A stretch of 64,000 nt of DNA from Macrostomum lignano (lineage: Eukaryota), in assembly GCA_002269645.1 (NCBI GenBank), contig NIVC01000040.1, positions 372,001 through 436,000 on the forward strand. The letters are read 5' to 3'. The notes beneath the pieces are model-generated. The model was given only the letters and a program-made list of their open reading frames with translations, did no database searches and was not told the origin of the DNA. Of the stretch, positions 13,077 through 41,163 are shown in pieces (within the stretch, counting starts at the first letter, position 1; the number at the start of each line of letters is the position of its first letter). Made by a program: the position numbers and the translations under genes.

Positions 13077-13682
13077 GTCAGACTGGCCGTCCGCCGTCAC
13101 CACAGCAGCTTGAGTGTCGCGATACAGTGCCATGACAGCGTCGAGTAGCTGCTGGGGTACCCGGTAAACTCGCAGGACAAAGGGGAGCGCGGCTCTCAGC
13201 ACCGAGTCAAACGCCTTTCGAAAGTAAACGAAGACAATGATCACGTAGACTGGCGGATGCGCGCCTCCTCGATGACACGGCGGAGTGCGAGGATCTGTGT
13301 CATTGTACCGCGTTGCGGCCGGAATCCGTTCTGCTCGTACCGCAGGTACGGGTCCATGCAGCACCGGCCGACTGCAGACGATATCGAGCAGCAGCCGCTT
13401 GAAGAGCTTCGCGGTGCAGGACATCAGCAAGAATCCGCGGTGGTCTTCTTTCCCAGTTGTCCCTGCCTTTTTTGAGATCTGCACGATGTGCGTGACGGTC
13501 CACTCGGGGGGGTGCAGGATCGAACGCGGGCGAGTACGCGGTTCAATGACGCTTACACAGTGGAGCCGCAGCGCTTTGACTGGGACTTCGTCGGGGCCTT
13601 GCCGCCTGTTGTTTTCCGAGAGAACAGCACAACGTCCTCCGTGGTGACTGGTCTGGTGCAGAAGTCCTCGGCTGGGAGCGGC
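13077..13682 (-). pseudogene. LINE (RTE-like) ORF2 fragment, reverse transcriptase N-terminal part, frameshifted
   Basis: GPDEVPVKAL, PPEW..IVQISKK, YFRKAFDSV, YRVPQQLLDAVMALYRDTQAAVVTADG motifs. Confidence 0.85.
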
Positions 13683-13687
13683 ATGTC

Positions 13688-21350: not shown

Positions 21351-21612
21351 GTGTTGTCACAAAGTTGTCACATTAAATTTAAGTGACACTGCGCAGACAA
21401 ACAACTGAGAAAAAGTAGACTTTCACTTTCACAACTTCAATTGCGAGTGACATATCTAGTTATTCTAGTACTCGTAGCTGTGGATAAAAGAAGACATCGA
21501 CAGGCAGAAGGTAGGCGAAAATTGGTACCTATTGCGAGAGTCGAGACCAGTCTGGATAAATTGACAATCATTAAATCAAGCATAAAATCACAGTTAAAAA
21601 TGTCCATAAACA

Positions 21613-23225
21613 TTAACTCTTCATGATATCGTCGCTACTTATGGACAATCCAGGACGCCTTGGTGAACCGCGACAGATGTTCTGCAGTTTACCGAAGAGC
21701 CATGTACACGGACCTAAAATGGTAATATTAGTAAGAATCTTTTATCGTTTATGATATATTTAGTGCTAATTGTTTTTTATTAAGTTCTACATATTAAAAG
21801 CCTTGATCTTTTAAACTATAAATATTAATGATAGAAACATCGTCCGTTTATAAAAATAAGTAATGGAATAGGGTCTACATCGCCTGAAGCATCAATCAAT
21901 GAATTCAGAGGTGAGATGTCAAGGCTTACGGGGGATTGCTAAGATGTCAAGGCTCAAGGAGGAACTGATGAGATGCTAAGGTTTATAGCGGAATTGATGA
22001 GATGCCATGGCTCATAGGGGGAATTGTTGATATGCTAAAGCTTATTGGGGTATTGCTGGGGTCTACGACAATTTGACTGCCACAAATTGACTGCGGCAAT
22101 TTGACTGCAAACAAAATGACTGCCAAAAATGACTGCCAAAAAACACCCCAAGCTCTTTATTCATGATCGTATTTATGCAAGGCTTTTACATGAGCAAAAA
22201 TGCAAGCTACATTTGGCTTTCAACAAATAATACGTGCATGTATATCTACTAATGTTCAAACGGATCCTGCACATGTAGCTGTGTTCCATGAATGCTGTTT
22301 ATAGAACTAGCCGCACGCTAGCGTATCACTAGCTTTAGCTTTGACTAGGCCTAATAAGAAAGCCAAATGTGGCTTGCATTTTTGCTCATGTAAAAGCCTT
22401 GCTAGGTTCGCATAAATACGATCATGAATAAAGAGGCCTGGAGTGTTTTTTGGCAGTCATTTTGCTTGCAGTCAAATTCCGCAGTCATTTTGTCAGCAGT
22501 CAAATTGCTTGGCAGTCAAATTGTCGTGCACCCGTATTGCTGAGATGCCAGTATCGTTGGGGAAATTGCTGGTATGCCATGGCTCACAGGGGTGCTGATA
22601 TCTCAGGCTAGATTAGCTGGCTTTTAAGGCTAACGCTTTAGGAATTTCAGAATTAACTTTTATCTCAAACGCATGATTTTGACAAGCAAGGACTTGTTCT
22701 AAAGGTAGATAATTATTTTTTCCTCAAAAAAACTCATAAGTCGTTTATTAAATTTTATAATGCAGACAGACTACTGAAAAGCAATCCTCAATGCTTACGC
22801 GATATTCCACAGAAATCCAGTACAACTAAAACGATCAAAGCAAAGACAAAGATGATTGTCCATAAGTAGCCAGATAAGCAAGTCTCTTGCGTTGGAGTTG
22901 GTATTGACGCTGGGATTGTGCTGCAAGAACACTTCTGGCGAGTGCTACTACTAGTACTTTTAGTAGTATCCGTCATAGTAGTATCCGAATTCTTTACATT
23001 CACTTGCATTATGCAATTACTATCGTTCCATAGACGACAACATTTTGAATAAAATATCGGCCTTGCCAGCATTTCAACAAATCTTGGATCAAAGCATACG
23101 TCAGGACACTTAGCCAGTGAGTCAGTTCGTTTGTTATAGTAATAATTACTATCTGGCAGGTTCGTGTCAACTTGCAACTGCGGCGGCGCGTCGCAAAGTA
23201 ATAAGTTTTGAGCCAGCGGTAGCGA
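21613..23225 (-). CDS. Cys-rich single-pass membrane protein, paralog 1 (start codon not located)
   Basis: Exon 22799-23225: ..KRTDSLAKCPDVCFD..SKCCRLWNDSNC, Thr/Ser stalk, CSC, hydrophobic GYLWTIIFVFALIVLVVL, then phase-1 donor C|GTAAGC. Candidate last exon 21613-21713 (RPCTWLFGKL..) is in frame. Confidence 0.65.
21905..22600. repeat. Degenerate approximately 40-bp tandem repeat split by the Mutator MITE
   Basis: GAGATG(T/C)CA(A/T)GGCT(C/T)A..GGGG..TTG units on both sides of 22059-22533. Confidence 0.6.
22059..22533. mobile_element. Mutator-like (MULE) MITE, 475 bp
   Basis: About 170-bp imperfect TIRs beginning GGGT..ACGACAATTTGACTGCCA with internal TGACTGC repeats. 9-bp TSD GTATTGCTG at 22050-22058 and 22534-22542. 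Confidence 0.92.
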
Positions 23226-24015
23226 CTAGCAAGTTTTAAACAATGTGAAGTTTCGAGCTTGTAAAAAACATCCAGTCGAAATAGGCTTCTGCTTCTAACA
23301 AAACCTACGAATGTTAAATAGCATATTTATGGCAAATAAAATAAATGAAAAACTACAAAGTCGAAAAACAGAAAAAGTCCACCGTAGATGGAACTTGCAC
23401 GCTTATTTATTGGTTTATAAAGCTTCAATTTATCAATATAGAAAAAGGCCAATTGTGAAAAATTTTATAAATTTAAAAAAATATGTTTTCATAAAAAAAT
23501 GATAAAAAAAAATGAATAGCTAAAAAACACTTGAAGTTTAGAGATTGCAGAATGACAAGTGACATGGATATTTTTATATTTAACATAATTGGTAAAAATA
23601 TACATTTTTTATTATGATGATTATTAATCGTATTACAGTAAATGTTTTTAGGAAAGTAAAGTTCACCTCCTGTTTTTAAGTGCAGTTGAAAATTTTATAG
23701 CTCTACCCGTGAGCATTTTGAACATGAAATCTGCAGAGAATATAGTATTTCACCTGAAGACTCAAGTGTGCGCATTTAATAAAATGATAATACATATGTA
23801 CGAGTATATACATCATGTATATTAAAAGCCATTAATAATTTCTTTTTTTGGAATGATAAATGACATATTTAAATTATTTACAATGTCTAAAATACGATTG
23901 AAGTGGCTAAACCAAGTTCGAAAATCACCAAGCGATCGGATTTAGCAACCACGGTGCCTAGCGCGAGTTCCAATCTCATTTCTGGGACACGCGCGTAGAA
24001 GCTGGCGACAGGACT

Positions 24016-25329
24016 TTAAGCAGTTTCAAATTCTCCACCCAATACTTGGCTGCTGCTAGTAGATGTAGTCCGAGTTCGTTGCGGAGCAGCTCTCTGATTT
24101 CCACCGGTAATATCTAATGCGCTCACCTCATCATCGTCGATATGACTCTCCACAGGAGCAGCGACAGGCATAAAATTAGCATTCGAAGAAGGCGACCGCG
24201 TTTTAATGTCATTCTTAGACTCCGTGTTATCTGCACCTGCTGCTGTAATATTATCAATTAAGGCCGAATCTGCCTGTGCATCACCGTCATCCTTGGCCTG
24301 GGCGGCTTCAGTCTCCTGAACAGACTGAACTGGTTCTTTTTTGTTCTTAAATTGACGCTTCAAGAGCATGATTAAACGAGATAAAGGACCTGAAAGACGT
24401 TAAAATTCATATCATTAAATTTGCTAGTCAATTCACAGATCAAATCAAGGCAAGCAGTCACACACATTCCCAATGGAGACGGTACTTAGGCAAAGAAGCA
24501 TCCCAGAGTCACTTGAGTCGTTGCTTTCACAGGTAAAATAGAAAAAGAAGTGACTCTAGACGACTCTAAGTCGCATCTGAGGCATGCCAGAGTCGCTGTA
24601 GAACCACTGAGTTGCATCTGCGTCACGTTATGAATTAGAATCGAATTTCACATTTATAACAGCTCTATTTAGTCTACTTGGGTTAAAAGAAAGTTAAGCG
24701 CTAACACAACGACTTTCTGTCGCATTACAGTCGTTTGAGTCGTTAAAACGTCACTAGTGAGTGGTTTCCAATGGCTGTTTAGCGATTCTTGTCAAGGTAA
24801 CGTTTTCACCGGGATTCAACGGGACAAAGGTAGTTGACTCACCTGACTTGCTGAACACGTCCCAAAGAAAGTAACAAATTCCAATGAAAGTACCAAAGCA
24901 TAACATGGCAGAATAAAAATAACCAGCTTTGGTAGTGCCGCTAGCAACATCTGTGCAATTTTTGTTGTCTACTTGTCCTGGCGGCCCTGAGGAACTGACA
25001 GTTGGACAATGACAGTCTCGTGATGGAGCAGGACTGGAACTGCTGGGTGAAGTTGTAGTCGCAGTTGTAGTAGATGTAGCGCTGCTAGTGACGGCACCGG
25101 CACATGGCCGCTGCCGAAGCAGGCAGTCATTATTAGCCCAGAGACGGCAGCAATGAGAACATATTGCCGGAATGCTTAACCTTGCATAATGGACTCGATC
25201 GAAGCATGGTCTGAGACAGTTCTCGGGTCTGTTAGTTCTATTTTTAAAGTAGGTAGGCCGGCAATCCTGCGGATTCGCCAATAATTTGCAGAACGCCAAT
25301 AACAGCACAACGGGAATCAGCCGCAACAT
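24016..25329 (-). CDS. Cys-rich type I membrane protein, paralog 2, about 286 aa, 2 exons
   Basis: Exon 24843-25329: signal peptide MLRLIPVVLLLAFCKLLA, NRT..CLRPCFD..CSHCCRLWANNDC, S/T stalk, CHC, TM GYFYSAMLCFGTFIGICYFLW. Donor G|GTGAGT, acceptor TTTCAG. Exon 24016-24389 in frame (GPLSRLIMLLKRQFKNKK.., acidic tail). Total 861 nt. Confidence 0.8.
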
Positions 25330-25499
25330 CGTGTGGTTACTGAAAATTAGAATGTAAAGAAAATGTATGAGGATGTAATTATTTCGTTTACATGGTTCCC
25401 ATAACAATAAGCTTGGTACAAACAATTAGAAATGACGAGTTTTGGAGAGACTTTTAAGGATTTCTACGAATAAACTACGACTAAGTTAACTCTCGGAGT

Positions 25500-26400
25500 T
25501 GTGATATTTCGGGTTTGTGCTATTTCGGGTTCATGGTATTTCGGGTTTGTGCTATTTCGGGTTTGTGCTATTTCGGGTTCATGGTATTTCGGGTTTGTGC
25601 TATTTCGGGTTTGTGCTATTTCGGGTTCATGGTATTTCGGGTTTGTGCTATTTCGGGTTCATGGTATTTCGGGTTTGTGCTATTTCGGGTTCATGGTATT
25701 TCGGGTTTGTGCTATTTCGGGTTTGTGCTATTTCGGGTTCATGGTATTTCGGGTTTGTGCTATTTCGGGTTTGTGCTATTTCGGGTTCATGGTATTTCGG
25801 GTTTGTGCTATTTCGGGTTTGTGCTATTTCGGGTTCATGGTATTTCGGGTTTGTGCTATTTTGGGTTTGTGCTATTTCGGGTTCATGGTATTTCGGGTTT
25901 GTGCTATTTCGGGTTTGTGCTATTTCGGGTTCATGGTATTTCGGGTTTGTGATATTTCGGGTTCATGGTATTTCGTGTTTGTGATATTTCGTGTTGGTCA
26001 TATTTCGGGTTTGTGATTTTTCGTGTTTGCGATACTTCGGGTTTGTGATATTTCGGGTTAGCGATATTTCGGGTTAGCGATATTTCGGGTTTGCACTATT
26101 TCGGGTTTGTGATATTTCGGGTTTGTGATATTTCGGGTTCATGGTATTTCGTGTTGGTCATATTTCGGGTTTGTGATATTTCGGGTTTGCGATACTTCGG
26201 GTTTGTGATATTTCGGGTTAGCGATAGTTCGGGTTAGCGATATTTTGGGTTTGCACTATTTCGGGTTTGCACTATTTCGGGTTTGTGATATTTCGGGTTT
26301 GTGATATTTCGGGTTTGCGATACTTCGGGTTTGCACTATTTCGGGTTAGCGATATTTCGGGTTTGTGATATTTCGGGTTTGTGATATTTCGGGTTTGTGA
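25500..26400. repeat. 15-bp minisatellite with variant patterning
   Basis: TATTTCGGGTTTGTGC / TATTTCGGGTTCATGG type units, drifting to TATTTCGGGTTAGCGA-type variants rightwards. Confidence 0.95.
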
Positions 26401-27094
26401 TCCCCCCACTACGATTATAGTAGTGTGTAACGCAAACAAAAAATGCAAGTCTATAAAATTGAGGACAGGAAAACCTTATACAATATTCGCATATATTATA
26501 AAGTCATCAAAATGTTTTTTGTGTAACATTAAACAAAGTTACATAGATTCCATCCTCTGCAATTTTTTAAAGTTAGACTTCAATTAATACGACAGCTGGG
26601 CAAAAGTTTGCGGACTGTGTTTTTTACTCTAAACGACAGGAATGAATTTTTTTAGTAACAAAAGTCAGTAAACAATAAACAAAGTCCGGAAATTTCTGCA
26701 ACAGTTATCGTACAACGGTTTAATAGGAGCCAATGAAAAAATATTTACACAAATTTTACAGTAGTAAAATTTAAGCAGCCAATATCACATTGCTTTAATT
26801 TAAAAAAATTACCAAAGCCATTATTCATGCACTAAAAAGCATACACACACCATGAGGCCTATGATTGGAATTAAAAAACTACGAGCTATGCAAAAGTTTA
26901 CGATAAAAGCTAAAAATGCTACTTAACAAGGCATTGTTTAGTAGTATAGTAAGTATAAGCTACAGATCGTGGGGTGATAAAATTGAGAAATTAACATAAG
27001 ACAAGTAAAAATATTCTATTATTTTTCTAAAAAATTGGTTAGAAGTTTCTTGTACTATCAAATTTCAGATTAGCTTATACCAGTTCGCACAAGG

Positions 27095-27311
27095 TCACAG
27101 CGGATCAATGCAAATTTCGCTGTTGCTCGGTGGGTCGCTAATCGGGTCTGAAATAAGTGGGAATGCGAGCTAATACGATAAAAATTTTACTTGACGTACA
27201 TGTAGTCTGTGTTTTGTTCGGTACACCTTAACTAATGGATGCATACATATTAACAGACAGGCAGACAGACAAGTAAAGGAGACAGACAGGCAGACAGACA
27301 GACAGACAGGC

Positions 27312-27350
<39 letters not shown>

Positions 27351-27456
27351 GAGACAGACAGACAGACAGGCAGACAGACAGACAGACAGACAGACAGACA
27401 GGCAGACAGACAGACAGACAGACAGGCAGACAGACAGACAGACAGACGAGTAAAGG

Positions 27457-27497
<41 letters not shown>

Positions 27498-27572
27498 GGC
27501 AGAAAGACAGACAGACAGGCAGACAGACAGACAGACAGACAGACAGGCAGACAGACAGACAGACAGACAGGC

Positions 27573-27644
<72 letters not shown>

Positions 27645-27653
27645 GAGTAAAGG

Positions 27654-27690
<37 letters not shown>

Positions 27691-27713
27691 GGCAGACAGG
27701 CAGACAGACAGGC

Positions 27714-27758
<45 letters not shown>

Positions 27759-27761
27759 GGC

Positions 27762-27837
<76 letters not shown>

Positions 27838-27903
27838 GAGTAAAGGAGACAGACAGACAGACAGACAGACAGGCAGACAGACAGACAGACAGACGAGTAA
27901 AGG

Positions 27904-27944
<41 letters not shown>

Positions 27945-27967
27945 GGCAGAAAGACAGACAGACAGGC

Positions 27968-28000
<33 letters not shown>

Positions 28001-28027
28001 GGCAGACAGACAGACAGACAGACAGGC

Positions 28028-28064
<37 letters not shown>

Positions 28065-28067
28065 GGC

Positions 28068-28139
<72 letters not shown>

Positions 28140-28148
28140 GAGTAAAGG

Positions 28149-28185
<37 letters not shown>

Positions 28186-28204
28186 GGCAGACAGGCAGAC
28201 AGGC

Positions 28205-28273
<69 letters not shown>

Positions 28274-28305
28274 GGCAGACAGACAGACAGACAGACGAGT
28301 AAAGG

Positions 28306-28342
<37 letters not shown>

Positions 28343-28349
28343 GGCAGAA

Positions 28350-28390
<41 letters not shown>

Positions 28391-28405
28391 GGCAGACAGA
28401 CAGGC

Positions 28406-28473
<68 letters not shown>

Positions 28474-28482
28474 GAGTAAAGG

Positions 28483-28519
<37 letters not shown>

Positions 28520-28542
28520 GGCAGACAGGCAGACAGACAGGC

Positions 28543-28615
<73 letters not shown>

Positions 28616-28647
28616 GGCAGACAGACAGACAGACAGACGAGTAAAGG

Positions 28648-28688
<41 letters not shown>

Positions 28689-28763
28689 GGCAGAAAGACA
28701 GACAGACAGGCAGACAGACAGACAGACAGACAGACAGACAGGCAGACAGACAGACAGACAGGC

Positions 28764-28843
<80 letters not shown>

Positions 28844-28852
28844 GAGTAAAGG

Positions 28853-28893
<41 letters not shown>

Positions 28894-28895
28894 GG

Positions 28896-28945
<50 letters not shown>

Positions 28946-28977
28946 GGCAGACAGACAGACAGACAGACGAGTAAAGG

Positions 28978-29018
<41 letters not shown>

Positions 29019-29021
29019 GGC

Positions 29022-29082
<61 letters not shown>

Positions 29083-29330
29083 GGCAGAAAGACAGACAGA
29101 CAGGCAGACAGACAGACAGACAGACAGGCAGGCAGGCAGACAGGCAGACAGACAGACAGACAGACAGACAGACAGGCAGGCAGGCAGACAGACAGACAGA
29201 CAGACAGGCAGGCAGGCAGGCAGACAGACAGACAGGCAGACAGACAGACAGACAGACAGGCAGGCAGGCAGACAGACAGACAGACAGACAGGCAGGCAGG
29301 CAGGCAGACAGACAGACAGGCAGACAGACA

Positions 29331-29363
<33 letters not shown>

Positions 29364-32300
29364 CCATCGAACCAGTCTCACCAGTCATCTCAGCCTCAGC
29401 TCGCACCAGATCCATCAAATCGCCATCCTGATGCAGCAGGGTGCCATCAGAACCCGCAGCGTTGGACGGCAGCTCCACAGTTGGCTGAGAGCCGCCGGCA
29501 GCTGGATCTTCATCATTGGTAGTATCGGTGTCATTCGAGTCGTAATCATAGTCCACTAATCTCCCAGCAGACGAGGAGGAGGAGGTCTCTTTTGGTGTCA
29601 CCTCGTGAAAGGCTTCGCCGTGCTCCAACAGCCAGGTGAACAATTCGCCGCGTTGCTTCGCCGGCAACTTGCAGTAGTTGATGAGGCGTCGATACAGACT
29701 CCCAACAGTGAGTCCCAGTTGTCTGCAGTCAGCTTGAAACTGCTGCAACCTGTGCTGGAAATCTGTGTCGCCAAAAGTGAAATAGACACAGGAGCGGCCA
29801 GTCACAGCGCAGGCCATCAGCTGGATTAGCGACTTCAATTGTAGATCGCCGCCGAATGCGCCGCAACCCCAGTTGCCCGTGGCAACGGGACGACGCTTGG
29901 ATTTATTTTTAACATTGGCCGGACCGCCAAATCCTACGAGAGCTTTGTGCAGCTCTCTGTCGATAGCGGATTTGTTAAACTGTTGTTTGTAGCCTGCGGC
30001 ACCGCGACTGTAGCATCTGGCGTCAATGGCAACCAGCTTGGTTACCAGGCGACGGTTGGTGTCGCGAGGCCGAGTATCGGTGTGATCTCCGTTCCATTGG
30101 AATGTGCCTGTTGGTTGGGATGGAGAGAAAGGAGCCATGAAATGAGAGATGAGAAATGAGAGATGAGATAGGAGAGATGAGATAGGAGAGATGAGATAGA
30201 AGAGATGAGATAGGAGAGTCGATATAGGCGAGACGAGAGAGAAGATATTCTGAGAAAGGATAATAATAATAATATATGTACAACCGACAGCTCAGCGCAG
30301 CTATTACGCGGCGCATCTGAAGGCGTCAAGGACTGGGGGGTCGCCACACACACCCTCAATTACCCCAGCTAATGCTGGCAGCCATTTTACAGCTGGGTGA
30401 ACTGAGGCCATGCAGAGTTAAGCGTACGTCTTGCTCAAGGACACAAATTGTTCCGAGTGGCATCGGGAATCGAACCCCAGACCTTCAAGTCGTAATTTGG
30501 ACGCTCTAACCACTGGGCTACAACCTTCTGAATCTGAGAAATAAATAAATATGATAAGACAATATACGACTACTTTTAGGGATATCAAATGAGGATCAAG
30601 ACAATAAAATTAGAGAAAAAACTTAGCAGCCACTCACTGGAGTAGCCAGTGTAGTTGGAGTAGCGTTCGGCTCCGGTGATCCACAGCGCTTCGCCGTCCT
30701 CCAAGGACTCGGCCAGCAGGCGGGAGAGCAGCAGCTCCGGACAGATGAGGAAGCGAATCTCTTCCTGCATGTTGGGATGATTTGAAAGTGACTTAAATGT
30801 ATAAAGGGAAATTTATCGTAGCTAGCAGGAGGATCTGGGAGGCTGGCCCAGCAACTGAGGATCTGGGAGGCTGGCCCAGCAACTGAGGATCTGGGAGACT
30901 GGCCCAGCAACTGAGGATCTGGGAGACTGGCCCAGCAACTGAGGATCTGGGAGGCTGGTCCAGCAACTGGGGATCTGGGAGGCTGGCCCAGCAACTGAGG
31001 ATCTGGGAGGCTGGTCCAGCAACTGGGGATCTGGGAGGCTGGCCCAGCAACTGAGGATCTGGGAGGCTGGCCCAGCAACTGTGGATCTGGGAGGCTGGCC
31101 CAGCAACTGGGGATCTGAGAGGCTGGTCCAGCAACTGAGGATCTGGGAGGCTGGCCCAACAACCAGGGATCTGAGAGACTGGTCCAGCAACTGGGGATCT
31201 GAGAGGCTGGTCCAGCAACTGGGGATCTGGGAAGCTGGCCCAGCAACTGGGGATCTGGGAGGCTGGCCCAGCAACTGGGGATCTGAGAGGCTGGCCCAGC
31301 AACTGGGGATCTGAGAGGCTGGTCCAGCAACTGAGGATCTGGGAGGCTGGTCCAGCAACTGAGGATCTGGGAGGCTGGCCCAGCAACTGAGGATCTGAGA
31401 GGCTGGTCCAGCAACTGAGGATCTGGGAGGCTGGCCCAGCAACTGGGGATCTGGGAGGCTGGCCCAGCAACTGAGGATCTGGGAGGCTGGCCCAGCAACT
31501 GGGGATCTGGGAGGCTGGCCCAGCAACTGGGGATCTGAGAGGCTGGCCCAGCAACTGGGGATCTGAGAGGCTGGCCCAGCAACTGGGGATCTGGGAGACT
31601 CGCCCAGCAACTGGGGATCTGAGAGGCTGGCCTAGCAACTGGGGATCTGGGAGACTGGCCCAGCAACTGGGGATCTGGGAGGCTGGCCCAGCAACTGAGG
31701 ATCTAGGAGGCTGGCCCAGCAACTGGGGATCTGGGAGGCTGGCCCAGCAACTGGGGATCTGAGAGGCTGGCCCAGCAACTGGGGATCTGAGAGGCTGGCC
31801 CAGCAACTGGGGATCTGGGAGACTGGCCCAGCAACTGGGGATCTGGGAGACTGGCCCAGCAACTGGGGATCTGAGAGGCTGGCCCAGCAACTGAGGATCT
31901 AGGAGGCTGGCCCAGCAACTGGGGATCTGGGAGGCTGGCACAGCAACTGGGGATCTGGGAGGCTTGCCCAGCAACTGAGGATCTGAGAGGCCTCACTCTG
32001 CATTACCAAAAAACCCGAGCGCACCTGCACCAGGCCGCGCCCCAGCACGCCGCCCCCGATGTAGGCGTTGGCGAAGTCCACCTCCAGCATGCCGGCACCG
32101 TCATCCTCGATGGTGCCCTCTGCGGCCGCCAGCAGATCAGGCAGCAGTTCAGTCCGAGCTGACCAGTCTATGCGTTCGTTTATCACTCGACGACTAAACG
32201 TGACAACGCCCAGAGGATCTGCGAGAGTTGTACGCTTTAACAATTATGATTGGAACAAAATTGAATCAGTCAGTCAGTCAGAGACACACATCAAAACCAG

Positions 32301-35151
32301 GCAGAATTTAGCTGACTTCACTTTTGTCCACTGTCTTCTACAGAACTCTCAATAATCTGTTTAACTGTCAACCGCACTCAGCCGAGTGCGCAGGAGAGGT
32401 TATATTATAGCCTGCTTTTGGGAGAGTCTATTAAAACTTTAAGCAATTCCAATTCTTCTATCACGGAACAAAGCAATTTTATTATCGGTAACCGAATAGA
32501 GATGAAATTTACTAGCAAAGCTGTTCTGCTACTGGTAGGATTCGTTCTAATTCTAAACAACCAAATTGAAAGCGTCCAAAGTGTACCAGCTGGTCAAGTT
32601 TCGAGCAAGTCAATCATGTTTCGCAGTCCGGCTGAACTCAAGCAGTACCTGAGAACGTTGAACGCTTTCTATGCCACTTTGGGACGGCCCAGGTAATTTA
32701 AATTCGTTTATATTCGCCATATTCACCACACATCGAAAGTCAAATGGTCGCTATGTACACTCTGTACAGTATTGGCGCGCTTGTACATATTTTTATACAA
32801 GAATTATTTATTCAATATTTCAGATACCGCAAGAGGTTTCACTTCGAAGCCTGAGTCAAACTGACCGACTGACTGGGAGGAACACCAAAAAAGCAAGGAT
32901 AATACAAAGCAATCTTGGACAAACCGTCAATAAAAAAATATAAAAGCTGGATATGCAAAATAATCAGCAATCAGAAAAACTAATTACAATGGATTGATGC
33001 TTGCTTATTTTGATTATTTATTAACTTTTTAGTCCGGGGTTCGATTCCCCATCTCACTGGAACAATTTGTGTCCTTGAGCAAGACACTTAACTCTGCATT
33101 GCTTCAGTTCACCCAGCTGTAAAATGGGTGCCAGCATTAGCTGGGGTAATTGAGGCTGTGTGTGGCGACCCCCCAGTCCTTGGACTGAACAGCCGTACGC
33201 AGCCTTCAGATGCGCCGCGCAATAGCTGGCCCATTAGGGCAGGTGCAATCAATTATGATTATCATTAGTAGTCGAAAAAATTAATCCCTAACCAAACAAA
33301 GTGTTGATAATGAATTAATTACCTTTAGTAGTAACTCTTTGGAAATAGTTGAACAAGCATTTCAGCTTTTCAATTCGGCGGGGGCAACCTGAACCGGCTG
33401 GACCTCCGGATGAGAACAGGCTGAAAATTAGTAGTACATCAGAAGAAGATGGTTAATAATCATAATACTGACAGAATGCTTTACATAATCCACTTCCATC
33501 TTATAACTCTCGAATGGTAAAATATCTACTCTTAACACTAAACCTTAAGGTTTGTGAGGGATTTCAAACCCCCAGTCGCTAACCCTAACCCTAATCCTTC
33601 GCCCCAGTCCCTAATCCTTCACCCTCAGTCTCTAATCCTTCACCCTCAGTCTCTAATCCTTCACCCTCAGTCTCTAATCCTTCACCCTCAGTCTCTAATC
33701 CTTCACCCTCAGTCTCTAATCCTTCACCCTCAGTCTCTAATCCTTCACCCTCAGTCTCTAATCCTTCACCCTCAGTCTCTAATCCTTCACCCTCAGTCCC
33801 TAATCCTTCACCCTCAGTCTCTAATCCTTCACCCTCAGTCCCTAATCCTTCACCCTCAGTCCCTAATCCTTCACCCTCAGTCTCTAATCCTTCACCCTCA
33901 GTCTCTAATCCTTCACCCTCAGTCTCTAATCCTTCACCCTCAGTCTCTAATCCTTCACCCTCAGTCTCTAATCATTCACCCTCAGTCTCTAATCCTTCAC
34001 CCTCAGTCTCTAATCCTTCACCCTCAGTCTCTAATCCTTCACCCTCAGTCTCTAATCCTTCACCCTCAGTCTCTAATCCTTCACCCTCAGTCTCTAATCC
34101 TTCACCCAAAAAAAGTAAACAAAAGCCAATATACTCCAACTCACGTGCTAAAATGTATGGTAGGGAAGTTGGCGTATTCCCTGTTAGCAAAGCTTCGCCT
34201 AGGAAAGGTGCTAAAAAATGCGTTAGCCAATAAGCTGGCCACCTGTAGCTGACTGAGCGTCACCTTGAGCTGATAGCCGCACCTCAGCAGAGGCGGAGGC
34301 GTAGTAACCAGATGCGGCAGAGCCAAGGCCAGCCTCACCATACCAGGCAAGACACGGTTGAGAAAGTGCCTCATCTCTCCCCTACCCAACTCCTCAGTTA
34401 GCAGACAATTGAGACTATCCAAGCACAAGCTAGACTGCCTACGCCCGCTGCACACGTTCAACACCGTAGCCAAATCGTCTATACCAATGGAGCTTGCTGG
34501 CTTGAGTTGATTCAAACTGTGCTCAATAGCTGACCATCGACTGGCATTACTGGGAGAGCAGGGCATTCTAACATGGCCGGAGTCCCATCTGTCAGAGAAC
34601 TCGGTTGGCCAAGGCTGCGGCGGCTGGCTGGATCTTGCCTGCTCGTAGAAATTGTCGATTCTAAATAGTACAGAGTGTCCTAGTCTAGGAGGGCAGCTGA
34701 AGGGCAGCCGGGCAAGATTCGGCTCAGGCCTCAAAGCCTCGAGCTGGCGACGCCAGTCGCGACAACTGGATGTCGATGCGACCGTCGACGAGCTGACGGC
34801 TCCGCCAGTAAGAAAATGCTGCAACCGCTGCGACTCCTCGTCATTGTCGTCGGTTTCCGTTTCTTCTGCTTCTTCCTCCGCAATCGGCTCTGTAGCGGAG
34901 CTTGTAACACTGTCGTCTGTTGGGACTCTCTTGACCTGGCTCTTCTGCTGTTCTGGATCTGCTGAAGCAACAGGATCAGTGTCCGATCGATTCAGCGAAG
35001 CCGGCGGTGGATTGCTAGACTCGCCAGCTTTTCTCGGGCTCCGACGCGTCGGTGGCGTTTGCTGAGAAGCCCGATGCTTGCGTTTTGTTGCTGCTTCTAG
35101 GGGAGACACGTCGGGTTGCTCCGGCTCTTGCTGAATCTTTCTACGCTTCAT
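27095..35151 (-). CDS. PARG: Poly(ADP-ribose) glycohydrolase, 6 exons
   Basis: Exons 34145-35151, 33323-33420, 32025-32218, 30638-30764, 29382-30107, 27095-27147 (last exon tentative), phase-consistent. Motifs [43 protein letters not shown]|[12 protein letters not shown] (catalytic GGG..QEE), [30 protein letters not shown]. Confidence 0.95.
27252..29362. repeat. 2.1-kb (GACA)n microsatellite with recurring interruptions, PARG intron 5
   Basis: GACA/GGCA runs with about 11 GAGTAAAGGA interruptions. Confidence 0.98.
30120..30245. repeat. GAGAT-rich simple repeat, PARG intron 4
   Basis: GAGATGAGATAGGA-type units. Confidence 0.85.
30260..30525 (-). mobile_element. tRNA-derived SINE with CORE-like central domain, near full length
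   Basis: A box TAGCCCAGTGG, B box GGTTCGATTCC, GTGTCCTTGAGCAAG..TTAACTCTGCATGGCCTCAGTTCACCCAGCTGTAAAATGG, (ATT)n tail. Confidence 0.85.
30828..31990. repeat. 28-bp minisatellite, about 41 copies, PARG intron 3
   Basis: GATCTGGGAGGCTGGCCCAGCAACTG(A/G)G; period 28. Confidence 0.97.
32502..32854 (+). CDS. npy/npf: Neuropeptide Y/F precursor, 73 aa, 2 exons, antisense within PARG intron 2
   Basis: Exon 32502-32692: signal peptide [18 protein letters not shown].. then [24 protein letters not shown](R). Phase-2 intron in the final Arg codon, as is typical of NPF genes. Exon 32824-32854 gives [14 protein letters not shown]-like near 32400, AATAAA near 32928. Confidence 0.88.
33031..33230 (+). mobile_element. 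5'-truncated copy of the same SINE, PARG intron 2
   Basis: B box GGTTCGATTCC, GTGTCCTTGAGCAAGACACTTAAC.. and GCCTTCAGATGCGCCGCG shared with 30260-30525, opposite orientation. Confidence 0.85.
33579..34107. repeat. 21-bp minisatellite, about 24 copies, PARG intron 1
   Basis: CCTTCACCCTCAGTCTCTAAT; preceded by CTAACCCTAACCCTAA. Confidence 0.97.
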
Positions 35152-37040: not shown

Positions 37041-40000
37041 TCAATGCAGCCACTGCCTATAATCCTCTGGCACCGCCGTTAGCAAATTTTTCGATTCCAA
37101 AAACTTTCTACTAAACAATTTAGCGTAGTAGCGCTGGCCCAAGTCGCACAGGCAGGTGACAATCACGTGACCAGGCCCCATCTGGCGGGCGGCCTGCACG
37201 GCGCCGGCCACGTTAATGCCGGACGAGGCGCCAACAAAGAAGCCCTCCTCATGCAGCAGGCGGAACGTGTGCTCAACCGCCATTGCGTCGGTGATGTGCA
37301 GCGCGTGATCCACAGGTGCGCCAGACAGGTTCTGCGTCACCCGGCCCTGCCCGATGCCCTCGGTGATGGAGCCGTCGCCTTGGCGTTTCAACTCGCCATG
37401 GGTGAAATAGTTGTACAGTACGCTGCCCTCAGGGTCCAGTAAGAAGGTGCGCACGTCCGGGTTGCGCTCCTGGGGGTTCCAGGGGATGAAGATAGCTTCA
37501 ACTACAATTTCACTTAATTTCTGTATCACCCTCTCTTCCCTGTTCTATGTATCTCCCTCTCCCCCTATCTGTATCTACCTCTCCCCAAGTCTGTATCTCC
37601 CTCTCCCCCAGTCTGTATCTCCCTCTCCCCCAGTCTGTATCTCCCTCTTCCCCAGTCTGTATCTCCCTCTTCCCCAGTCTGTATCTCCCTTTCCCCCAGT
37701 CTGTATCTCCCTCTTCCCCAGTCTGTATCTCCCTCTTCCCCAGTCTGTATCTCCCTCTTCCCCAGTCTGTATCTCCCTTTCCCCCAGTCTGTATCTCCCT
37801 CTCCCCCAGTCTGTATCTCCCTCTTCCCCAGTCTGTATCTCCCTCTCCCCCAGTCTGTATCTCCCTCTCCCCCAGTCTGTATCTCCCTCTTCCCCAGTCT
37901 GTATCTCCCTTTCCCCCCAGTCTGTATCTCCCGCTTCCCTGTCTGTATCTCCCTCTCCCCCAGTCTGTATCTCCCGCTTCCCTGTCTGTATCTACCTCTC
38001 CCCAAGTCTGTATCTCCCTCTCCCCTGTCTGTATCCCCTCTCCAATCTGTTTACACACCAAGCCTTATTCTATTACTCTCAATCCCGTGATGAGCGCGTC
38101 ATCTGTCACTGCCTGTAGTCTTTATCTATTTTTTATTCAACTGCTCATAAAAACTGTCTGCAAGCTTCTCTAGACCCAAAAGGGGACACTATAGCTACTC
38201 TTATCTTAACCGCTCGGGCTAAGCAATTTATTAGAGAAAATTCACACCTTGTACCAGCCCTTACCCTGAAACTGAAATAACTAGGTCGGCTTATCTAAAA
38301 AACGATAAGGTAACAGTTTTAGCTAGCCAACAAAATATTACAATTTTCCCTACCTTGAGAAAAGTGCCAACACCGGCCAGTGTACCCCCGGTGCCGGTGG
38401 CGAAGGCCACAGCGTCAACCCGGCCCTCGGTCTCCTCCCAGATCTCCGGACCAGTGGTTTCGTAGTGGGCCAGCCTGCATAGAAATTGAGCATAGCGTAC
38501 TTAGTTGGGGGGTATTTGGGTAGCTATATAGTGAGTAGTTCAAGTATATCCAGATTGTAAAGCAATATTATATGATTCCTATATGGATCTCTACCTCTTG
38601 AGAGTCTTAACCAGACGTAAGAATCTCATTCCTTAGTCTGGAATAAAGATTTCATGATAATCTCACCCTTAATTCTAATTAAGCTTAAACCCTACTGAGA
38701 ATCTCATTTTTAATTCTAATAACCCTTAAATCCCCACGAGAATCTTAACGCTTAGAGCCTTATCGTCATGAGAATCTCACCTTTAATTCTAATTACCCTT
38801 AAACCCTAATGAGAATCTCATCATTTAGAGCCTTATCGTCATGAGAATCTCAACACTTAGAGCCTCGTTTTCATGAGAATCTCACCGGTTAGAGCCTCCT
38901 CGACCTCATGAGAATCTCACCACTTAGAGCCTTCTCACTCTTCTGAGAATCTCCCCGCCTAGAGGCTCCTCGACCTCATGAGAATCTCACCACTTAGAGC
39001 CTTCTCACTCTCCTGAGAATCTCCCCGCCTAGAGCCTCCTCGACCTCATGAGAATCATATCCCTTAGAGCCTCCTCACTCTCCTGAGAATCTCACCGCTT
39101 AAAGCCTCCTCACCCTTATAAGAATCTCAGCACTGAAAGTTTCACCTAAAGTCTCAAACAAGAACTAAAGATAGACATGCGCAGCGCCCTTTAAGTCTTA
39201 TATACTCGTATATTTCTAATAATAAATTTTTACTCCTGATACGCTCCTATCTCGTAAACCAAGCCAATAACCCAAGGGTGCCTGTTGGACTTTAATCACA
39301 CTTTAACTTAAGTTTAACCGAACAAACGCACAACTAACGTTTCAAGAAAGCTAAAAATTCTACCTGTGATAAGGCACAACTGTAAAAATACACTATACTA
39401 TATAATTGATAACAGATTCTCAACAGTTGGAAAATGACTGCATGAGACTAGTCTAAGAGCGCAACACGCAGTGTTAGAGTGCTATGATTAAAAAGTAGCG
39501 AACAAATATGATGTACACGTTAGCATGTACATGAATGCACAATGCACATAACTGCCCTGACTCATAGTTACAAGGTGTATCAGACGTTTGCTACAGCCAG
39601 GGGAGCAAAACTAACAGCAAGAGTATATTAGCATCATGGCCTGTTTCCGTTCTAAATTGATCTGTGATCTGGCATTTCATTCCCTGTGTTTTGTGACTTC
39701 CGGATATCTTCAGTAGCTTCCGGGATCTGCGATTTGGCATCTCATTCCCTGTGTTTCGTGACTTCCGGATCTCTTCAGTAGCATCCGGGATCTGCGATCT
39801 GGAATCTCATTCCCTGTGTTTTGTGACTTCCGGATCTCCTCAGTAGCATCCGGGATCTGCGATCTGGCATCTCATTCCCTGTGTTTTGTAACTTCCGGAT
39901 CTCTTCAGTAGCTTCCGGGATCTGCGATCTGGCATTTCATTCCCTGTGTTTTGTAACTTCCGGATCTCCTCAGTAGCTTCCAGGATCTGCGATCTGGCAT

Positions 40001-41163
40001 TTCATTCCCTGTGTTTTGTAACTTCCGGATCTCCTCATTAGCTTCCAGGATCTGCGATCTGGCATTTCATTCCCTGTGTTTTGTAACTTCCGGATCTCTT
40101 CAGTAGCTTCCGGGATCTGCGATCTGGCATTTCATTCCCTGTGTTTTGTAACTTCCGGATCTCCTCAGTAGCTTCCAGGATCTGCGATCTGGCATTTCAT
40201 TCCCTGTGTTTTGTAACTTCCGGATCTCCTCAGTAGCTTCCAGGATCTGCGATCTGGCATTTCATTCCCTGTGTTTTGTAACTTCCGGATCTCTTCAGTA
40301 GCTTCCGGGATCTGCGATCTGGCATTTCATTCCCTGTGTTCTGTAACTTCCGGATCTCTTCAGTAGCTTCCGGGATCTGCGATCTGGCATTTCATTCCCT
40401 GTGTTCTGTAACTTCCGGATCTCTTCAGTAGCTTCCGGGATCTGCAATCTGGCATCTCATTCCCTGTGTTCTGTAACTTCCGGATCTCTTCAGTAGCTTC
40501 CGGGATCTGCGATCTGGCATTTCATTCCCTGTGTTCTGTAACTTCCAGGTCCCAGTATTATCTAAGAATTCCTCCCGTTGACTGTGTCTGGATAAAGAAC
40601 TGGTTAGCTAGCCCACATACGGCTACACGTAGACCCACGAGTTGGATCTGCAAATACTTATCACGCATATGGTCTCACCTATTAGCGGTATTATCAAACT
40701 GATTAGTCCACACGGAGTTCTCCAATCCTTCGGCGAATCGCTTCGCTTGATGATTATAATTATTAGGATCCGTGTAGGCAACGGCCGGTACGGGATACAC
40801 TGTGGCGCCTAATACTCTTAACAAGTCGATTTTCTCTTTAGACTGAGTTTCAGGCATAAATATGACACATTTATACCCAAGCGCGTTGCACAGGTGAGCC
40901 AAACCGATACCGGTATTACCGGCGGTGCCTTCAACCACGGTGCCGCCAGGTTTCAATTGGCCGCGCTTTACCGCATCAGCAATCAGATACAAAGCGGCCC
41001 GGTCTTTCACCGAGCCGCCAGCGTTGGCGTACTCGGCTTTAGCAAGGATTTCGCAGCCAGTAGCTTCGCTAACCCGACCCAATCTGATCATAGGCGTACG
41101 CCCTACAGCGCCGCGAAGGCCCTGACGAATCAGACTGTTAGCCAGAGTGGACATGCTATTCAT
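37041..41163 (-). CDS. cysK: PLP-dependent cysteine synthase family protein (CysK / fungal Cys1-like), 344 aa, 3 exons
   Basis: Exons 40679-41163, 38354-38474, 37041-37469 (1035 nt, phases consistent). [17 protein letters not shown] (PLP lysine), [52 protein letters not shown]. No haem or Bateman domains, so not cystathionine beta-synthase. Confidence 0.93.
37545..38030. repeat. 22-bp minisatellite in cysteine synthase intron 2
   Basis: CCAGTCTGTATCTCCCTCT(T/C)CC. Confidence 0.95.
38690..39130. repeat. Approximately 32-35-bp minisatellite in cysteine synthase intron 1
   Basis: ATGAGAATCTCACCACTTAGAGCCTCCTCGACCTC-type units. Confidence 0.85.
39655..40550. repeat. 65-bp minisatellite, about 14 copies, cysteine synthase intron 1
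   Basis: GATCTGCGATCTGGCATTTCATTCCCTGTGTTTTGTAACTTCCGGATCTCTTCAGTAGCTTCCGG; period 65. Confidence 0.96.

What the first reader, a model, noticed from the sequence alone, without database searches (positions are those of the whole stretch)
21613..25329. Tandem pair of unrecognised Cys-rich type I membrane proteins sharing an ectodomain motif and an intron position
Seen: two adjacent minus-strand genes share the pattern Y-x2-(N/K)RT-x4-5-C-x3-CFD-x6-L-x2-P-x3-S-x-CCRLW-x4-C, then an S/T-rich stalk, C-x-C-x-T, a further Cys, and (S/A)GY followed by a TM helix. Both have a phase-1 donor at the same place (D-x4-S-|: WDVFSKSG| and LDFCGISR|), and both downstream exons start GTCC. Outside the Cys scaffold they are very divergent and the tails differ (long acidic versus 34 aa). 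I do not recognise the domain. Inference: a fast-evolving lineage-specific cell-surface family, such as allorecognition, immune, adhesion or gamete-interaction proteins.
Basis: partly seen in the sequence, partly recalled or inferred. Interest (0 to 1): 0.8.

Follow-up and report, generated by a model that had tools for sequence, protein, structure and literature searches.

The report
Orphan flatworm membrane-protein gene pair
Two neighbouring genes in the flatworm Macrostomum lignano encode small, cysteine-rich, single-pass surface proteins with no detectable relatives; the pair is real, but one copy has no start codon of its own, and lineage-specific genes like these are common in this animal.

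Summary
The window is Macrostomum lignano (Mlig_3_7, contig NIVC01000040.1). Gene A (25329..24016, minus strand, one phase-1 intron) translates to 286 aa. Gene B (23225..21613) is a true paralogue. The N-domain alignment scores 92 against 25.8±5 for shuffles, eight Cys are shared, and the phase-1 intron sits at the same place.

B is not annotated. It has no in-frame ATG, and its N-terminus is only weakly hydrophobic. Its ORF starts directly after a TAG that aligns with A's ATG. B therefore either takes its AUG from the M. lignano spliced leader (which ends in ATG), has an exon I did not find, or is a young pseudogene.

No relative was found in Pfam, PDB sequences, 1.84 billion representative proteins or metagenome contigs. 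AlphaFold models were unusable (pLDDT 48-49).

Best reading: a Macrostomum-restricted orphan family of type I, mucin-stalked surface glycoproteins. They lie downstream of a PALP-enzyme gene and PARG on the same strand, and A is probably trans-spliced. Interest is modest.

The parts
25340..25346 (-). Candidate SL trans-splice acceptor of gene A (TTTTCAG; the exon would begin at 25339, 10 nt before the ATG)
   Evidence: The sequence reads ctaattttcag|taaccacacgATG. It fits the [T/C]TNCAG motif reported for M. lignano trans-splice acceptors (PMC8629364). The '.g2' in the gene name marks a transcriptional unit split into genes after trans-splicing events were identified (PMC5816591). That this site is used is inferred, not shown.
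24843..25329 (-). Gene A, coding exon 1 (aa 1-162 plus the first base of codon 163). Signal peptide aa 1-18 (25329..25276); Cys-rich N-domain core aa 27-69 (25251..25123); S/T/P-rich stalk aa 77-105 (25101..25015); CxC...C...GY aa 106-137 (25014..24919); TM aa 138-159 (24918..24853)
   Evidence: The spliced translation is 100% identical over 286 aa to NCBI BOX15_Mlig023323g2. Hydropathy, Cys positions and sequons are; coordinates are.
24390..24842 (-). Gene A intron (453 nt, phase 1, GTGAGT...TTTCAG)
   Evidence: The junction is required to reproduce the annotated 286-aa protein.
24016..24389 (-). Gene A, coding exon 2: K/R-rich juxtamembrane segment, then an acidic, apparently disordered tail ending ...GGEFETA; stop TAA at 24018..24016
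   Evidence: From SKSG the tail is 127 aa with 14 K+R and 19 D+E; its first 25 residues have 7 K+R and 1 D+E.
23226..23228 (-). TAG immediately upstream of B's ORF. It is the in-frame stop that bounds the ORF and also a possible AG acceptor, in phase 0, for the spliced leader
   Evidence: The sequence reads aaaacttgcTAG|TCGCTACCG. In my hand alignment of the two N-termini (B LLL-C/PPQ against A LLLAFC/NPQ), this TAG falls at the position of A's ATG; this is an inference from the sequences. The M. lignano SL ends in ...TTGCATG (PMC8629364).
22799..23225 (-). Gene B, coding exon 1 (142 codons plus 1 base). Weak signal-peptide remnant (23225..23193); Cys-rich N-domain core (23141..23013); S/T-rich stalk (23012..22932); CxC...C...GY (22931..22866); TM (22865..22803)
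   Evidence: The frame is open throughout and all 8 shared Cys are kept. It is not annotated in NCBI.
21714..22798 (-). Gene B intron (1085 nt, phase 1, GTAAGC...TTTTAG). It contains a foldback (MITE-like) insertion at about 22060-22620
   Evidence: Inverted arms 22177-22221 / 22358-22402 are 98% complementary; arms 22096-22143 / 22461-22508 are 81% complementary.
21613..21713 (-). Gene B, coding exon 2 (a 34-aa basic tail, RPCTWLFGKLQNICRGSPRRPGLSISSDDIMKS, counting the junction-split R codon whose first base lies in exon 1; stop TAA at 21615..21613)
   Evidence: The exon starts GTCC as in A. P2, L6 and L10 after the junction are identical in A and B (read from the two sequences), but the tails as a whole are not significantly similar.

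Best explanation
The region holds two tandem paralogues of a taxonomically restricted (so far Macrostomum lignano-only) gene family. The family encodes small single-pass surface glycoproteins.

Architecture. Each protein has an N-terminal module of about 45-55 aa, presumably disulfide-bonded. It has an S/T/P-rich stalk that is probably O-glycosylated. A membrane-proximal CxC...C...GY element precedes one TM helix, which is followed by a basic juxtamembrane segment and a variable cytoplasmic tail.

Gene A (Mlig023323.g2) is a complete gene. Its cleavable signal peptide should send the N-terminus into the ER, giving type I topology with the Cys-rich head displayed on a mucin-like stalk. Its long acidic tail ends in -ETA, a possible class I PDZ ligand (weak inference).

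Genomic setting. A lies downstream of a PALP-enzyme gene and PARG on the same strand. It is most likely matured by spliced-leader (SL) trans-splicing at the TTTTCAG acceptor 10 nt before its ATG.

Gene B arose from the same intron-containing ancestor by DNA-level tandem duplication. It has since diverged to about 25% identity while keeping the Cys scaffold. It has no ATG of its own. My estimates for B are:
- about 0.4 that it is trans-spliced at the AG of the TAG bounding its ORF, so that the 3'-terminal AUG of the SL supplies the initiator Met, as an operon-like downstream gene of A;
- about 0.4 that it is a recently disabled pseudogene (ATG to TAG);
- about 0.2 that it has an upstream exon I did not recognise.

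Shown: paralogy, exon structure, A's identity with the annotated protein, and the absence of detectable relatives. Inferred: topology, glycosylation, trans-splicing, and any binding or recognition role of the head domain.
For: - Organism and gene model: A is 100% identical, at 100% coverage, to the M. lignano protein BOX15_Mlig023323g2 on the 1.33-Mb contig NIVC01000040.1.
- Paralogy: BLASTP E=1e-8. N-domain score 92 against 25.8±5 for shuffles. Eight aligned Cys and the CFD and CCRLW motifs. Same intron position and phase, and the same GTCC exon start.
- Topology of A: N-terminal 9-residue hydropathy 3.14; TM window at aa 138-160; 7 K+R against 1 D+E in the 25 residues after the TM. Stalk: 80% S/T/P over 25 aa in A and 64% in B. 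N-glycosylation sequons in the ectodomain: NRT and NCT in A, NDS in B.
- Orphan status: no significant Pfam match (none for A; one sub-threshold match for B, E=0.041, 13.5 bits against a cut-off of 27.1). No PDB sequence hit at E<=10. Only the query's own protein among 1.84e9 representatives. Only A and a frame-shifted fragment of A among 5.8e9 clusters. Nothing in metagenome contigs.
- Trans-splicing context: the SL is CGGTCTCTTACTGCGAAGACTCAATTTATTGCATG. The acceptor motif is [T/C]TNCAG, and 30% of genes are trans-spliced. Adjacent genes are assigned to one operon when less than 1000 bp apart (PMC8629364). '.gN' genes come from splitting transcriptional units at trans-splicing events (PMC5816591). 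The flatworm SL AUG is used as an initiator (Cheng et al. 2006, as summarised in PMC9851317). From A's stop (24016) to B's candidate acceptor (23226) is about 790 bp.
- Host-gene setting: PARG lies directly upstream on the same strand, and PALP-enzyme exons lie further upstream.
Against: - No transcript, SL-read or junction-read data could be consulted, so trans-splicing of A and any expression of B are inferences.
- B's candidate acceptor (TTGCTAG) does not fit the [T/C]TNCAG motif and has a poor pyrimidine tract. An ORF bounded by TAG is automatically 'in phase' with an AG, so that coincidence is cheap.
- With an SL-donated Met, B's N-terminus (MSLPLAQNLLLC) is a weak signal peptide.
- No AATAAA or ATTAAA lies within 700 nt downstream of B's stop.
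- B is absent from the transcriptome-based NCBI annotation.
- Disulfide bonding, glycosylation and surface localisation are not shown. Structure prediction failed (pLDDT 49.3 and 47.6), so a known fold cannot be excluded.
- Proteomes of other Macrostomum species are probably not in the searched libraries, so 'M. lignano-only' may just mean 'Macrostomum or Macrostomorpha-only'.
Confidence: 0.6

Rival explanations
1. Only A is a gene. B is a decaying tandem duplicate, a unitary pseudogene, that lost its start codon (ATG to TAG at the homologous position). Its signal peptide is eroding.
For: - B has no in-frame ATG, and a TAG sits exactly where A's ATG aligns.
- Its N-terminal hydrophobicity is weak.
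- No plausible upstream signal-peptide exon lies between A and B.
- B is not annotated and no protein was found for it.
- A transposon-like foldback has inserted in its intron.
- There is no canonical poly(A) hexamer within 700 nt downstream.
Against: - The frame is open for 142 + 34 codons. Both splice sites are intact (GTAAGC / TTTTAG), and all eight shared Cys and the CFD/CCRLW motifs are retained.
- The annotated frame scores better than the other two frames on codon usage (a weak test).
- The SL-AUG route is an established way for flatworm ORFs without an ATG to be translated.
- If B is a pseudogene, the inactivation must be recent relative to the old A/B split.
Confidence: 0.4
2. One reading: a fast-evolving cell-surface recognition family (allorecognition, immunity, adhesion or gamete interaction) under diversifying selection.
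For: - The architecture (displayed Cys-rich head on a mucin stalk, single TM) suits a binding or recognition molecule.
- The paralogues are very divergent outside the scaffold, at 25% identity.
- No homologues exist outside the species in public protein sets.
- Reproduction-related genes are reported to evolve rapidly in Macrostomum (title and abstract of PMC7336406).
Against: - No evolutionary rate, polymorphism or expression-site data exist for these genes.
- Mlig023323 does not appear in the supplementary tables held for four M. lignano expression or reproduction studies.
- Only two copies are present, with no expanded polymorphic cluster in the 64 kb. Only one annotated protein exists genome-wide at HMMER sensitivity. 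That is unlike typical allorecognition or immune families.
- Lack of homologues is the norm for a large share of M. lignano genes.
Confidence: 0.12
3. The head domain is a highly diverged member of an already known small Cys-rich ectodomain class, too far diverged for sequence methods. Leads from memory only: TNFR-type CRD, Shisa-like, Ly6/three-finger.
For: - Small disulfide-rich modules diverge quickly and are often missed by sequence profiles.
- The query profile had only two sequences.
- The structure models were too poor to test fold similarity.
Against: - hmmscan against all of Pfam-A, reporting up to E=10, returned no Cys-rich family for either protein. PDB sequences gave no hit at E<=10.
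- The Cys spacing (C-x3-C-x17-CC-x7-C, then CxC and C after a low-complexity stalk) does not match the signatures I recall for those families. That is recollection, not a test.
Confidence: 0.15
4. The pair is cargo or a by-product of a mobile element rather than host genes.
For: - Two inverted copies of a repeat of about 1 kb (20435-21468 and 36117-36923, about 75-92% identical across the aligned pieces, with 81-bp internal tandem units) bracket the PARG-A-B block.
- The window is rich in retrotransposon and transposase remnants.
Against: - Neither A nor B has any transposon domain.
- The bracketed block contains PARG, a conserved host gene.
- The repeats may simply be two insertions of a dispersed element in a repeat-rich genome.
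- No target-site duplications or terminal motifs were defined.
- A and B are only about 25% identical, so they are not recent TE copies.
Confidence: 0.04

Closest known systems
Generic mucin-stalk type I surface glycoproteins with a small N-terminal Cys-rich head, for example single-CRD TNF-receptor-superfamily members or Shisa-like adaptors (comparison from general knowledge)
   Same: The order of parts matches: signal peptide, disulfide-rich head of about 50 aa, S/T/P-rich linker, one TM helix, basic juxtamembrane stretch and an apparently disordered tail.
   Different: There is no sequence-level relationship. No significant Pfam match was found (none for A; one chance-level match for B, far below its cut-off) and no PDB sequence hit. 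The Cys pattern is distinct, with its invariant CFD and CCRLW motifs and a second CxC...C cluster next to the membrane. Fold similarity could not be tested.
Taxonomically restricted ('non-conserved') protein-coding genes of Macrostomum lignano
   Same: No homologue was found outside the species in very large protein libraries. A is annotated only as 'hypothetical protein'. Such genes are a large fraction of the M. lignano gene set (PMC8629364; PMC5816591).
   Different: Here two old paralogues allow a conserved scaffold and a conserved intron to be defined. That argues for a real, constrained protein family rather than a spurious ORF.
Flatworm mRNAs that take their initiator AUG from the spliced leader (Cheng et al. 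2006, J Biol Chem 281:733; summarised in PMC9851317)
   Same: B's ORF has no ATG and starts directly after an AG, in the phase that would put the SL's 3'-terminal AUG in frame. The M. lignano SL ends in ATG.
   Different: Use of the site is not shown. The acceptor context is poor, and the same sequence is equally well explained by an ATG-to-TAG inactivating change.

Membership tests
Type I single-pass membrane protein | Cleavable N-terminal signal peptide | tested here: inconclusive
   A has MLRLIPVVLLLAFCKLLA, with R3 then a strongly hydrophobic core (9-residue KD 3.14), so the feature is met by heuristic. B has no ATG, and its N-terminus reaches only 1.36. SignalP was not available.
Type I single-pass membrane protein | One TM helix with the positive-inside rule placing the C-terminus in the cytosol | tested here: met
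   19-residue KD windows exceed 1.6 at aa 138-160 in A, and reach 2.86 at aa 115-150 in B. The first 25 residues after the TM have 7 K+R / 1 D+E in A and 5 K+R / 0 D+E in B. AF2 models this segment as a confident helix.
Mucin-like (O-glycosylated) stalk protein | S/T/P-rich low-complexity segment in the ectodomain; actual O-glycosylation | tested here: inconclusive
   The composition criterion is met (80% S/T/P over 25 aa in A, 64% in B). Glycosylation itself cannot be tested with these tools.
Any Pfam-A domain family (including TNFR_c6, Shisa, UPAR_LY6, PSI, EGF-like) | Profile match at or near the gathering threshold | tested here: not met
   hmmscan of A and B, reporting up to E=10, gave no match for A. 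B gave only a 13.5-bit chance match to CFAP43_N (cut-off 27.1).
Proteins with a solved structure | Sequence-profile match to a PDB chain | tested here: not met
   The profile of A+B against 177,635 distinct PDB sequences gave 0 hits at E<=10. Fold-level comparison was not possible because the models had pLDDT 49.3 and 47.6.
SL trans-spliced, operon-type gene of M. lignano | 3' acceptor of type [T/C]TNCAG just upstream of the ORF with no cis donor upstream | tested here: inconclusive
   A has TTTTCAG 10 nt before its ATG, which fits. B has TTGCTAG, which has an AG but does not fit the motif.
SL trans-spliced, operon-type gene of M. lignano | Same-strand upstream neighbour within 1000 bp (repeat-adjusted) | tested here: met
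   From A's stop (24016) to B's acceptor (23226) is about 790 bp. From the annotated PARG end (27070) to A's acceptor (25340) is about 1.7 kb, of which 903 bp is a 16-bp satellite.
SL trans-spliced, operon-type gene of M. lignano | RNA-seq reads carrying the SL joined at the acceptor | not testable with these tools
   No transcript data were accessible. The only indirect hint is the '.g2' suffix of A's locus tag.
Transposable-element gene | TE protein domains, or many near-identical copies | tested here: not met
   A and B have no TE domain. The window holds only these two copies, about 25% identical. Only one annotated protein exists in the databases. The flanking inverted 1-kb repeats remain unexplained.

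The most novel reading that the evidence does not exclude
A and B define a new disulfide-rich ectodomain fold, confined to macrostomid flatworms, that acts in cell-cell or gamete recognition. B would be a working gene whose translation depends wholly on the AUG donated by the spliced leader: its own start codon was converted into the trans-splice acceptor (ATG to TAG), making it an obligate downstream cistron of A.
Probability: 0.08. Interest if true: 0.55.

Novelty: new variant of a known kind. Interest (0 to 1): 0.27.

Why it matters
If confirmed, the pair would add one more taxonomically restricted membrane-protein family to the M. lignano catalogue. It would define a new small Cys-rich ectodomain (CFD...CCRLW) that could be registered as a domain family.

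It would also give a tidy example of paralogues that differ in how they obtain a start codon: an own ATG in one, a spliced-leader AUG in the other.

On the practical side, gene B is missing from the public annotation. A UniRef entry named 'TFIID subunit 11-like' is a frame-shifted fragment of gene A. Both are annotation points worth correcting.

None of this bears on a long-standing open question, so the value is local to the Macrostomum community.

Tried and rejected
1. Structure route. AlphaFold2 on the A+B alignment (exon-1 products) gave pLDDT 49.3, and on the N-domain alone 47.6. Only the TM helix was confident. I therefore ran no Foldseek search, because the matches would be meaningless.
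2. Remote homology. Pfam reported up to E=10, a PDB profile search, phmmer-type searches with A and with B, a profile search of 1.84e9 representatives and back-translated pattern scans of metagenome contigs all found nothing beyond A itself.
4. Expression and function from the literature. 'Mlig023323' is absent from the full-text library. It is also absent from the supplements held for PMC7336406, PMC12896417, PMC5946080 and PMC5816591. PMC8629364 and PMC10786194 have no supplements held.
5. An upstream cis exon for B. I enumerated every ATG-started ORF with a phase-0 GT donor between A's stop and B. The only semi-plausible one is MMYILVHMYYHFIKCAHLSLQ|GTGAAA (23816..23754). It is not a convincing signal peptide and probably lies in A's 3'UTR.
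6. The name of the upstream gene. I spent the last homology search on PARG exon 1 to learn whether it is 'Mlig023323g1'. Only an old-assembly UniRef PARG came back, so the question stays open.
7. A codon-usage test of B's frame. The annotated frame is the best of the three, but the test is weak.
8. An SL RNA gene in the window: none.


Full report
**What the window is.** The spliced product of the first gene is 100% identical over all 286 residues to NCBI 'hypothetical protein BOX15_Mlig023323g2 [Macrostomum lignano]'. The exact-protein look-up places it on contig NIVC01000040.1 (1.33 Mb) of assembly GCA_002269645.1 (Mlig_3_7), range 386016-407329 reversed. The window is therefore nuclear DNA of the free-living flatworm M. 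lignano. Its composition is patchy (30-60% GC) and it is full of satellites and transposon remnants.

**Checking the observation: gene A.** On the minus strand, gene A has the following structure.
- ATG at 25329.
- Exon 1 to 24843, with donor G|GTGAGT.
- A 453-nt intron.
- Exon 2 preceded by the acceptor TCTTTCAG and starting at 24389.
- Stop TAA at 24018..24016.

**Checking the observation: gene B.** Gene B's ORF begins at 23225.
- Exon 1 ends at 22799, with donor C|GTAAGC.
- The intron is 1085 nt, with acceptor ATTTTAG.
- Exon 2 is 21713..21613 and ends in TAA.
- Both introns are phase 1. Both lie six residues after the Asp at the cytoplasmic end of the TM helix (WDVFSKS|G in A, LDFCGIS|R in B). 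Both downstream exons begin GTCC, giving x-Pro.

**The shared motif is real.** The alignment shows Y, RT, C-x3-CFD, L-x2-P-x3-S-x-CCRLW-x4-C, an S/T-rich stretch, CxCxT, one more Cys and (A/S)GY before the TM helix.
- BLASTP of the pair gives E=1e-8, with 25% identity over 126 aa.
- Each protein finds the other's exon by tblastn in the window (E=1.5e-5 and 3.7e-6), and there is no third copy.
- The N-domain local score is 92, against 25.8±5.0 (maximum 55) in 5000 shuffles that keep the Cys-rich composition.
- The cytoplasmic tails are not significantly alike (p=0.39).

The conserved intron shows that the duplication was at the DNA level, from an intron-containing ancestor.

B has no in-frame ATG. 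Upstream of 23225 the frame is closed by TAG (23228..23226). The first residues are SLPLAQNLLLC-DAPPQ. Their hydrophobicity (best 9-residue mean 1.36) is far below that of A's signal peptide (3.14).

I enumerated every ATG-started ORF with a phase-0 GT donor between A's stop and B. None gives a convincing signal-peptide exon.

B is not in the NCBI annotation. No gene is called in the 10 kb downstream of A, and a search with B's sequence found no protein.

When I align the N-termini by eye (A ...VVLLLAFCKLLANPQ against B ...QNLLL--CDAPPQ), B's TAG falls at the position of A's ATG.

**Three readings of B's 5' end.**
- B takes its start codon from the spliced leader. The M. lignano SL is CGGTCTCTTACTGCGAAGACTCAATTTATTGCATG, and 30% of genes are trans-spliced. 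Adjacent same-strand genes less than 1000 bp apart, with a trans-spliced downstream member, are treated as operons (PMC8629364). The flatworm SL's 3'-terminal AUG is a documented initiator for ORFs that lack one (Cheng et al. 2006, as summarised in PMC9851317). Splicing at the AG of B's TAG would put that AUG in frame and give Met-SLPLAQ..., a 176-aa protein. The site is about 790 bp from A's stop.
- The ATG mutated to TAG and B is a young pseudogene.
- An exon escaped me.

Arguments against the SL reading:
- The acceptor TTGCTAG does not fit [T/C]TNCAG.
- Any TAG-bounded ORF is trivially 'in phase' with an AG.
- The resulting signal peptide is weak.
- No canonical poly(A) hexamer follows B within 700 nt.

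Arguments against an old pseudogene:
- Both exons are open.
- Both splice sites are intact.
- All eight shared Cys are kept.

I put these at roughly 0.4 (SL AUG), 0.4 (pseudogene) and 0.2 (missed exon).

**What A looks like as a protein.**
- Signal peptide, aa 1-18.
- A Cys-rich head of about 55 aa. Cys 38, 42, 60, 61 and 69 are shared with B, and Cys 23, 57 and 76 are extra. It carries an NRT sequon.
- A stalk that is 80% S/T/P over 25 aa.
- CHC...NCT...GY next to the membrane.
- TM helix, aa 138-159.
- A K/R-rich juxtamembrane stretch (7 K+R, 1 D+E in 25 aa).
- A net-acidic, apparently disordered tail ending -FETA.

This is the anatomy of a type I, mucin-stalked surface glycoprotein that displays a small, presumably disulfide-bonded head. 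B has the same plan with a 34-aa basic tail. Topology, disulfides and glycosylation are inferred, not shown.

**Looking for relatives.**
- Pfam-A, reported up to E=10: nothing for A, and one chance-level 13.5-bit match for B.
- PDB sequences with the A+B profile: none at E<=10.
- 5.8e9 protein clusters: A itself, plus P0002.
- P0002 is a 160-aa UniRef entry named 'TFIID subunit 11-like'. Its N-terminal 36 residues are A's exon 1 read in a wrong frame, and the rest is A's exon 2.
- The A+B profile against 1.84e9 representatives with full HMMER: only A.
- Metagenome contigs: 204 pattern matches, none confirmed.
- AlphaFold2 with the two-sequence alignments gave pLDDT 49.3 and 47.6, so I attempted no fold comparison.

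The family is an orphan at the level these tools reach. Proteomes of other Macrostomum species are probably not in these libraries, so the true range may be the genus or order.

**Context.** On the same strand, going 5' to 3', the order is as follows.
- PALP-enzyme exons (41163..37041).
- PARG (35151..27070).
- A 16-bp satellite (25499-26401).
- Gene A, then gene B.

A's ATG is preceded at 10 nt by TTTTCAG, which fits the published trans-splice acceptor motif. [quoted passage not shown] So the '.g2' suffix suggests that A is a trans-spliced downstream gene of a multi-gene unit. I could not confirm which gene is g1.

Neither A nor B carries transposon domains. Retrotransposon remnants lie 4-8 kb beyond B (RT, RNase H, protease), and a foldback element sits inside B's intron. 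Two inverted copies of a 1-kb repeat (20435-21468 and 36117-36923) bracket the PARG-A-B block. I regard this as two insertions of a dispersed element, but I did not resolve it.

**Function.** No expression or phenotype data were found. 'Mlig023323' is absent from the searchable full texts and from the supplements held for four M. lignano studies. Two further papers had no supplements held.

The mechanism I commit to is generic: an extracellular binding head held away from the membrane by a glycosylated stalk, with the divergent tails coupling to different cytoplasmic partners. A's -ETA end is a weak PDZ-ligand candidate. The small copy number and lack of an expanded cluster argue somewhat against an allorecognition- or immune-type family.

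**Verdict.** This is a real, correctly described paralogous pair. One member is already an annotated hypothetical protein. The other is unannotated and possibly defective or SL-dependent. The ectodomain is an undescribed family. However, taxonomically restricted genes are very common in this genome (about 43% of non-trans-spliced genes are 'non-conserved' protein-coding genes), and nothing here points to an unusual mechanism. Interest is about 0.27. The most novel surviving reading (a new fold, a recognition role, and a start codon converted into an SL acceptor) has a probability of about 0.08.

Noticed in passing
window 20435-21468 and 36117-36923: Two inverted, colinear copies of a repeat of about 1 kb (about 75-92% identical across the aligned pieces), each containing 81-bp tandem units. 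They bracket the 14.6-kb PARG / gene A / gene B block. They could be two insertions of a dispersed element or the ends of a large composite element. No target-site duplications were sought.
   Followed up: partly
window 22060-22620 (inside gene B's intron): A foldback, MITE-like element. Arms 22177-22221 / 22358-22402 are 98% complementary. Outer arms are built of 13-15-bp GACTGC-type tandem units. It accounts for much of the size difference between B's intron (1085 nt) and A's (453 nt).
   Followed up: partly
window 25499-26401: A 16-bp satellite (TTGTGATATTTCGGGT, about 56 copies, 85% matches) lies 160 bp upstream of gene A's candidate acceptor, between PARG and A.
   Followed up: no
window 27250-30138 (minus strand): The ORF holding the last PARG coding exon runs on for about 2 kb through an (ACAG)n microsatellite, read as CLSV repeats. 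The annotated PARG gene range (to 27070) includes this array, yet the product is only 734 aa. Where the true stop or 3'UTR lies is unclear.
   Followed up: no
window 30689-32000 and 33476-34231: Long 28-bp and 21-bp tandem arrays lie inside the PARG gene range, presumably in introns. They create long spurious repeat ORFs on both strands.
   Followed up: no
window 13000-17200 (minus strand): A GC-rich (about 59%) degraded LTR-type retrotransposon. It has gag-like, aspartyl protease, RT and RNase H pieces in different frames, and a 124-nt direct repeat at 13806-13929 / 17077-17200 (93% identical).
   Followed up: partly
window 3186-5486 (minus strand): An intact 766-aa ORF matches DUF1258 (E=1.2e-14) and DUF4218. 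It looks like a transposase-related gene. A 73-bp tandem array lies next to it at 2334-2929.
   Followed up: partly
window 37041-41163 (minus strand); proteins P0002, P0003: Exons of a PALP-fold (pyridoxal-phosphate-dependent) enzyme lie upstream of PARG on the same strand. An old-assembly UniRef protein (P0003) fuses PALP and PARG domains into one model. UniRef's 'TFIID subunit 11-like' (P0002) is a frame-shifted fragment of gene A. Both look like annotation artefacts.
   Followed up: partly
window 49700-50254 and 62929-63747: Further retroelement fragments: an RT piece on the minus strand and a retrotransposon gag-like ORF on the plus strand.
   Followed up: no
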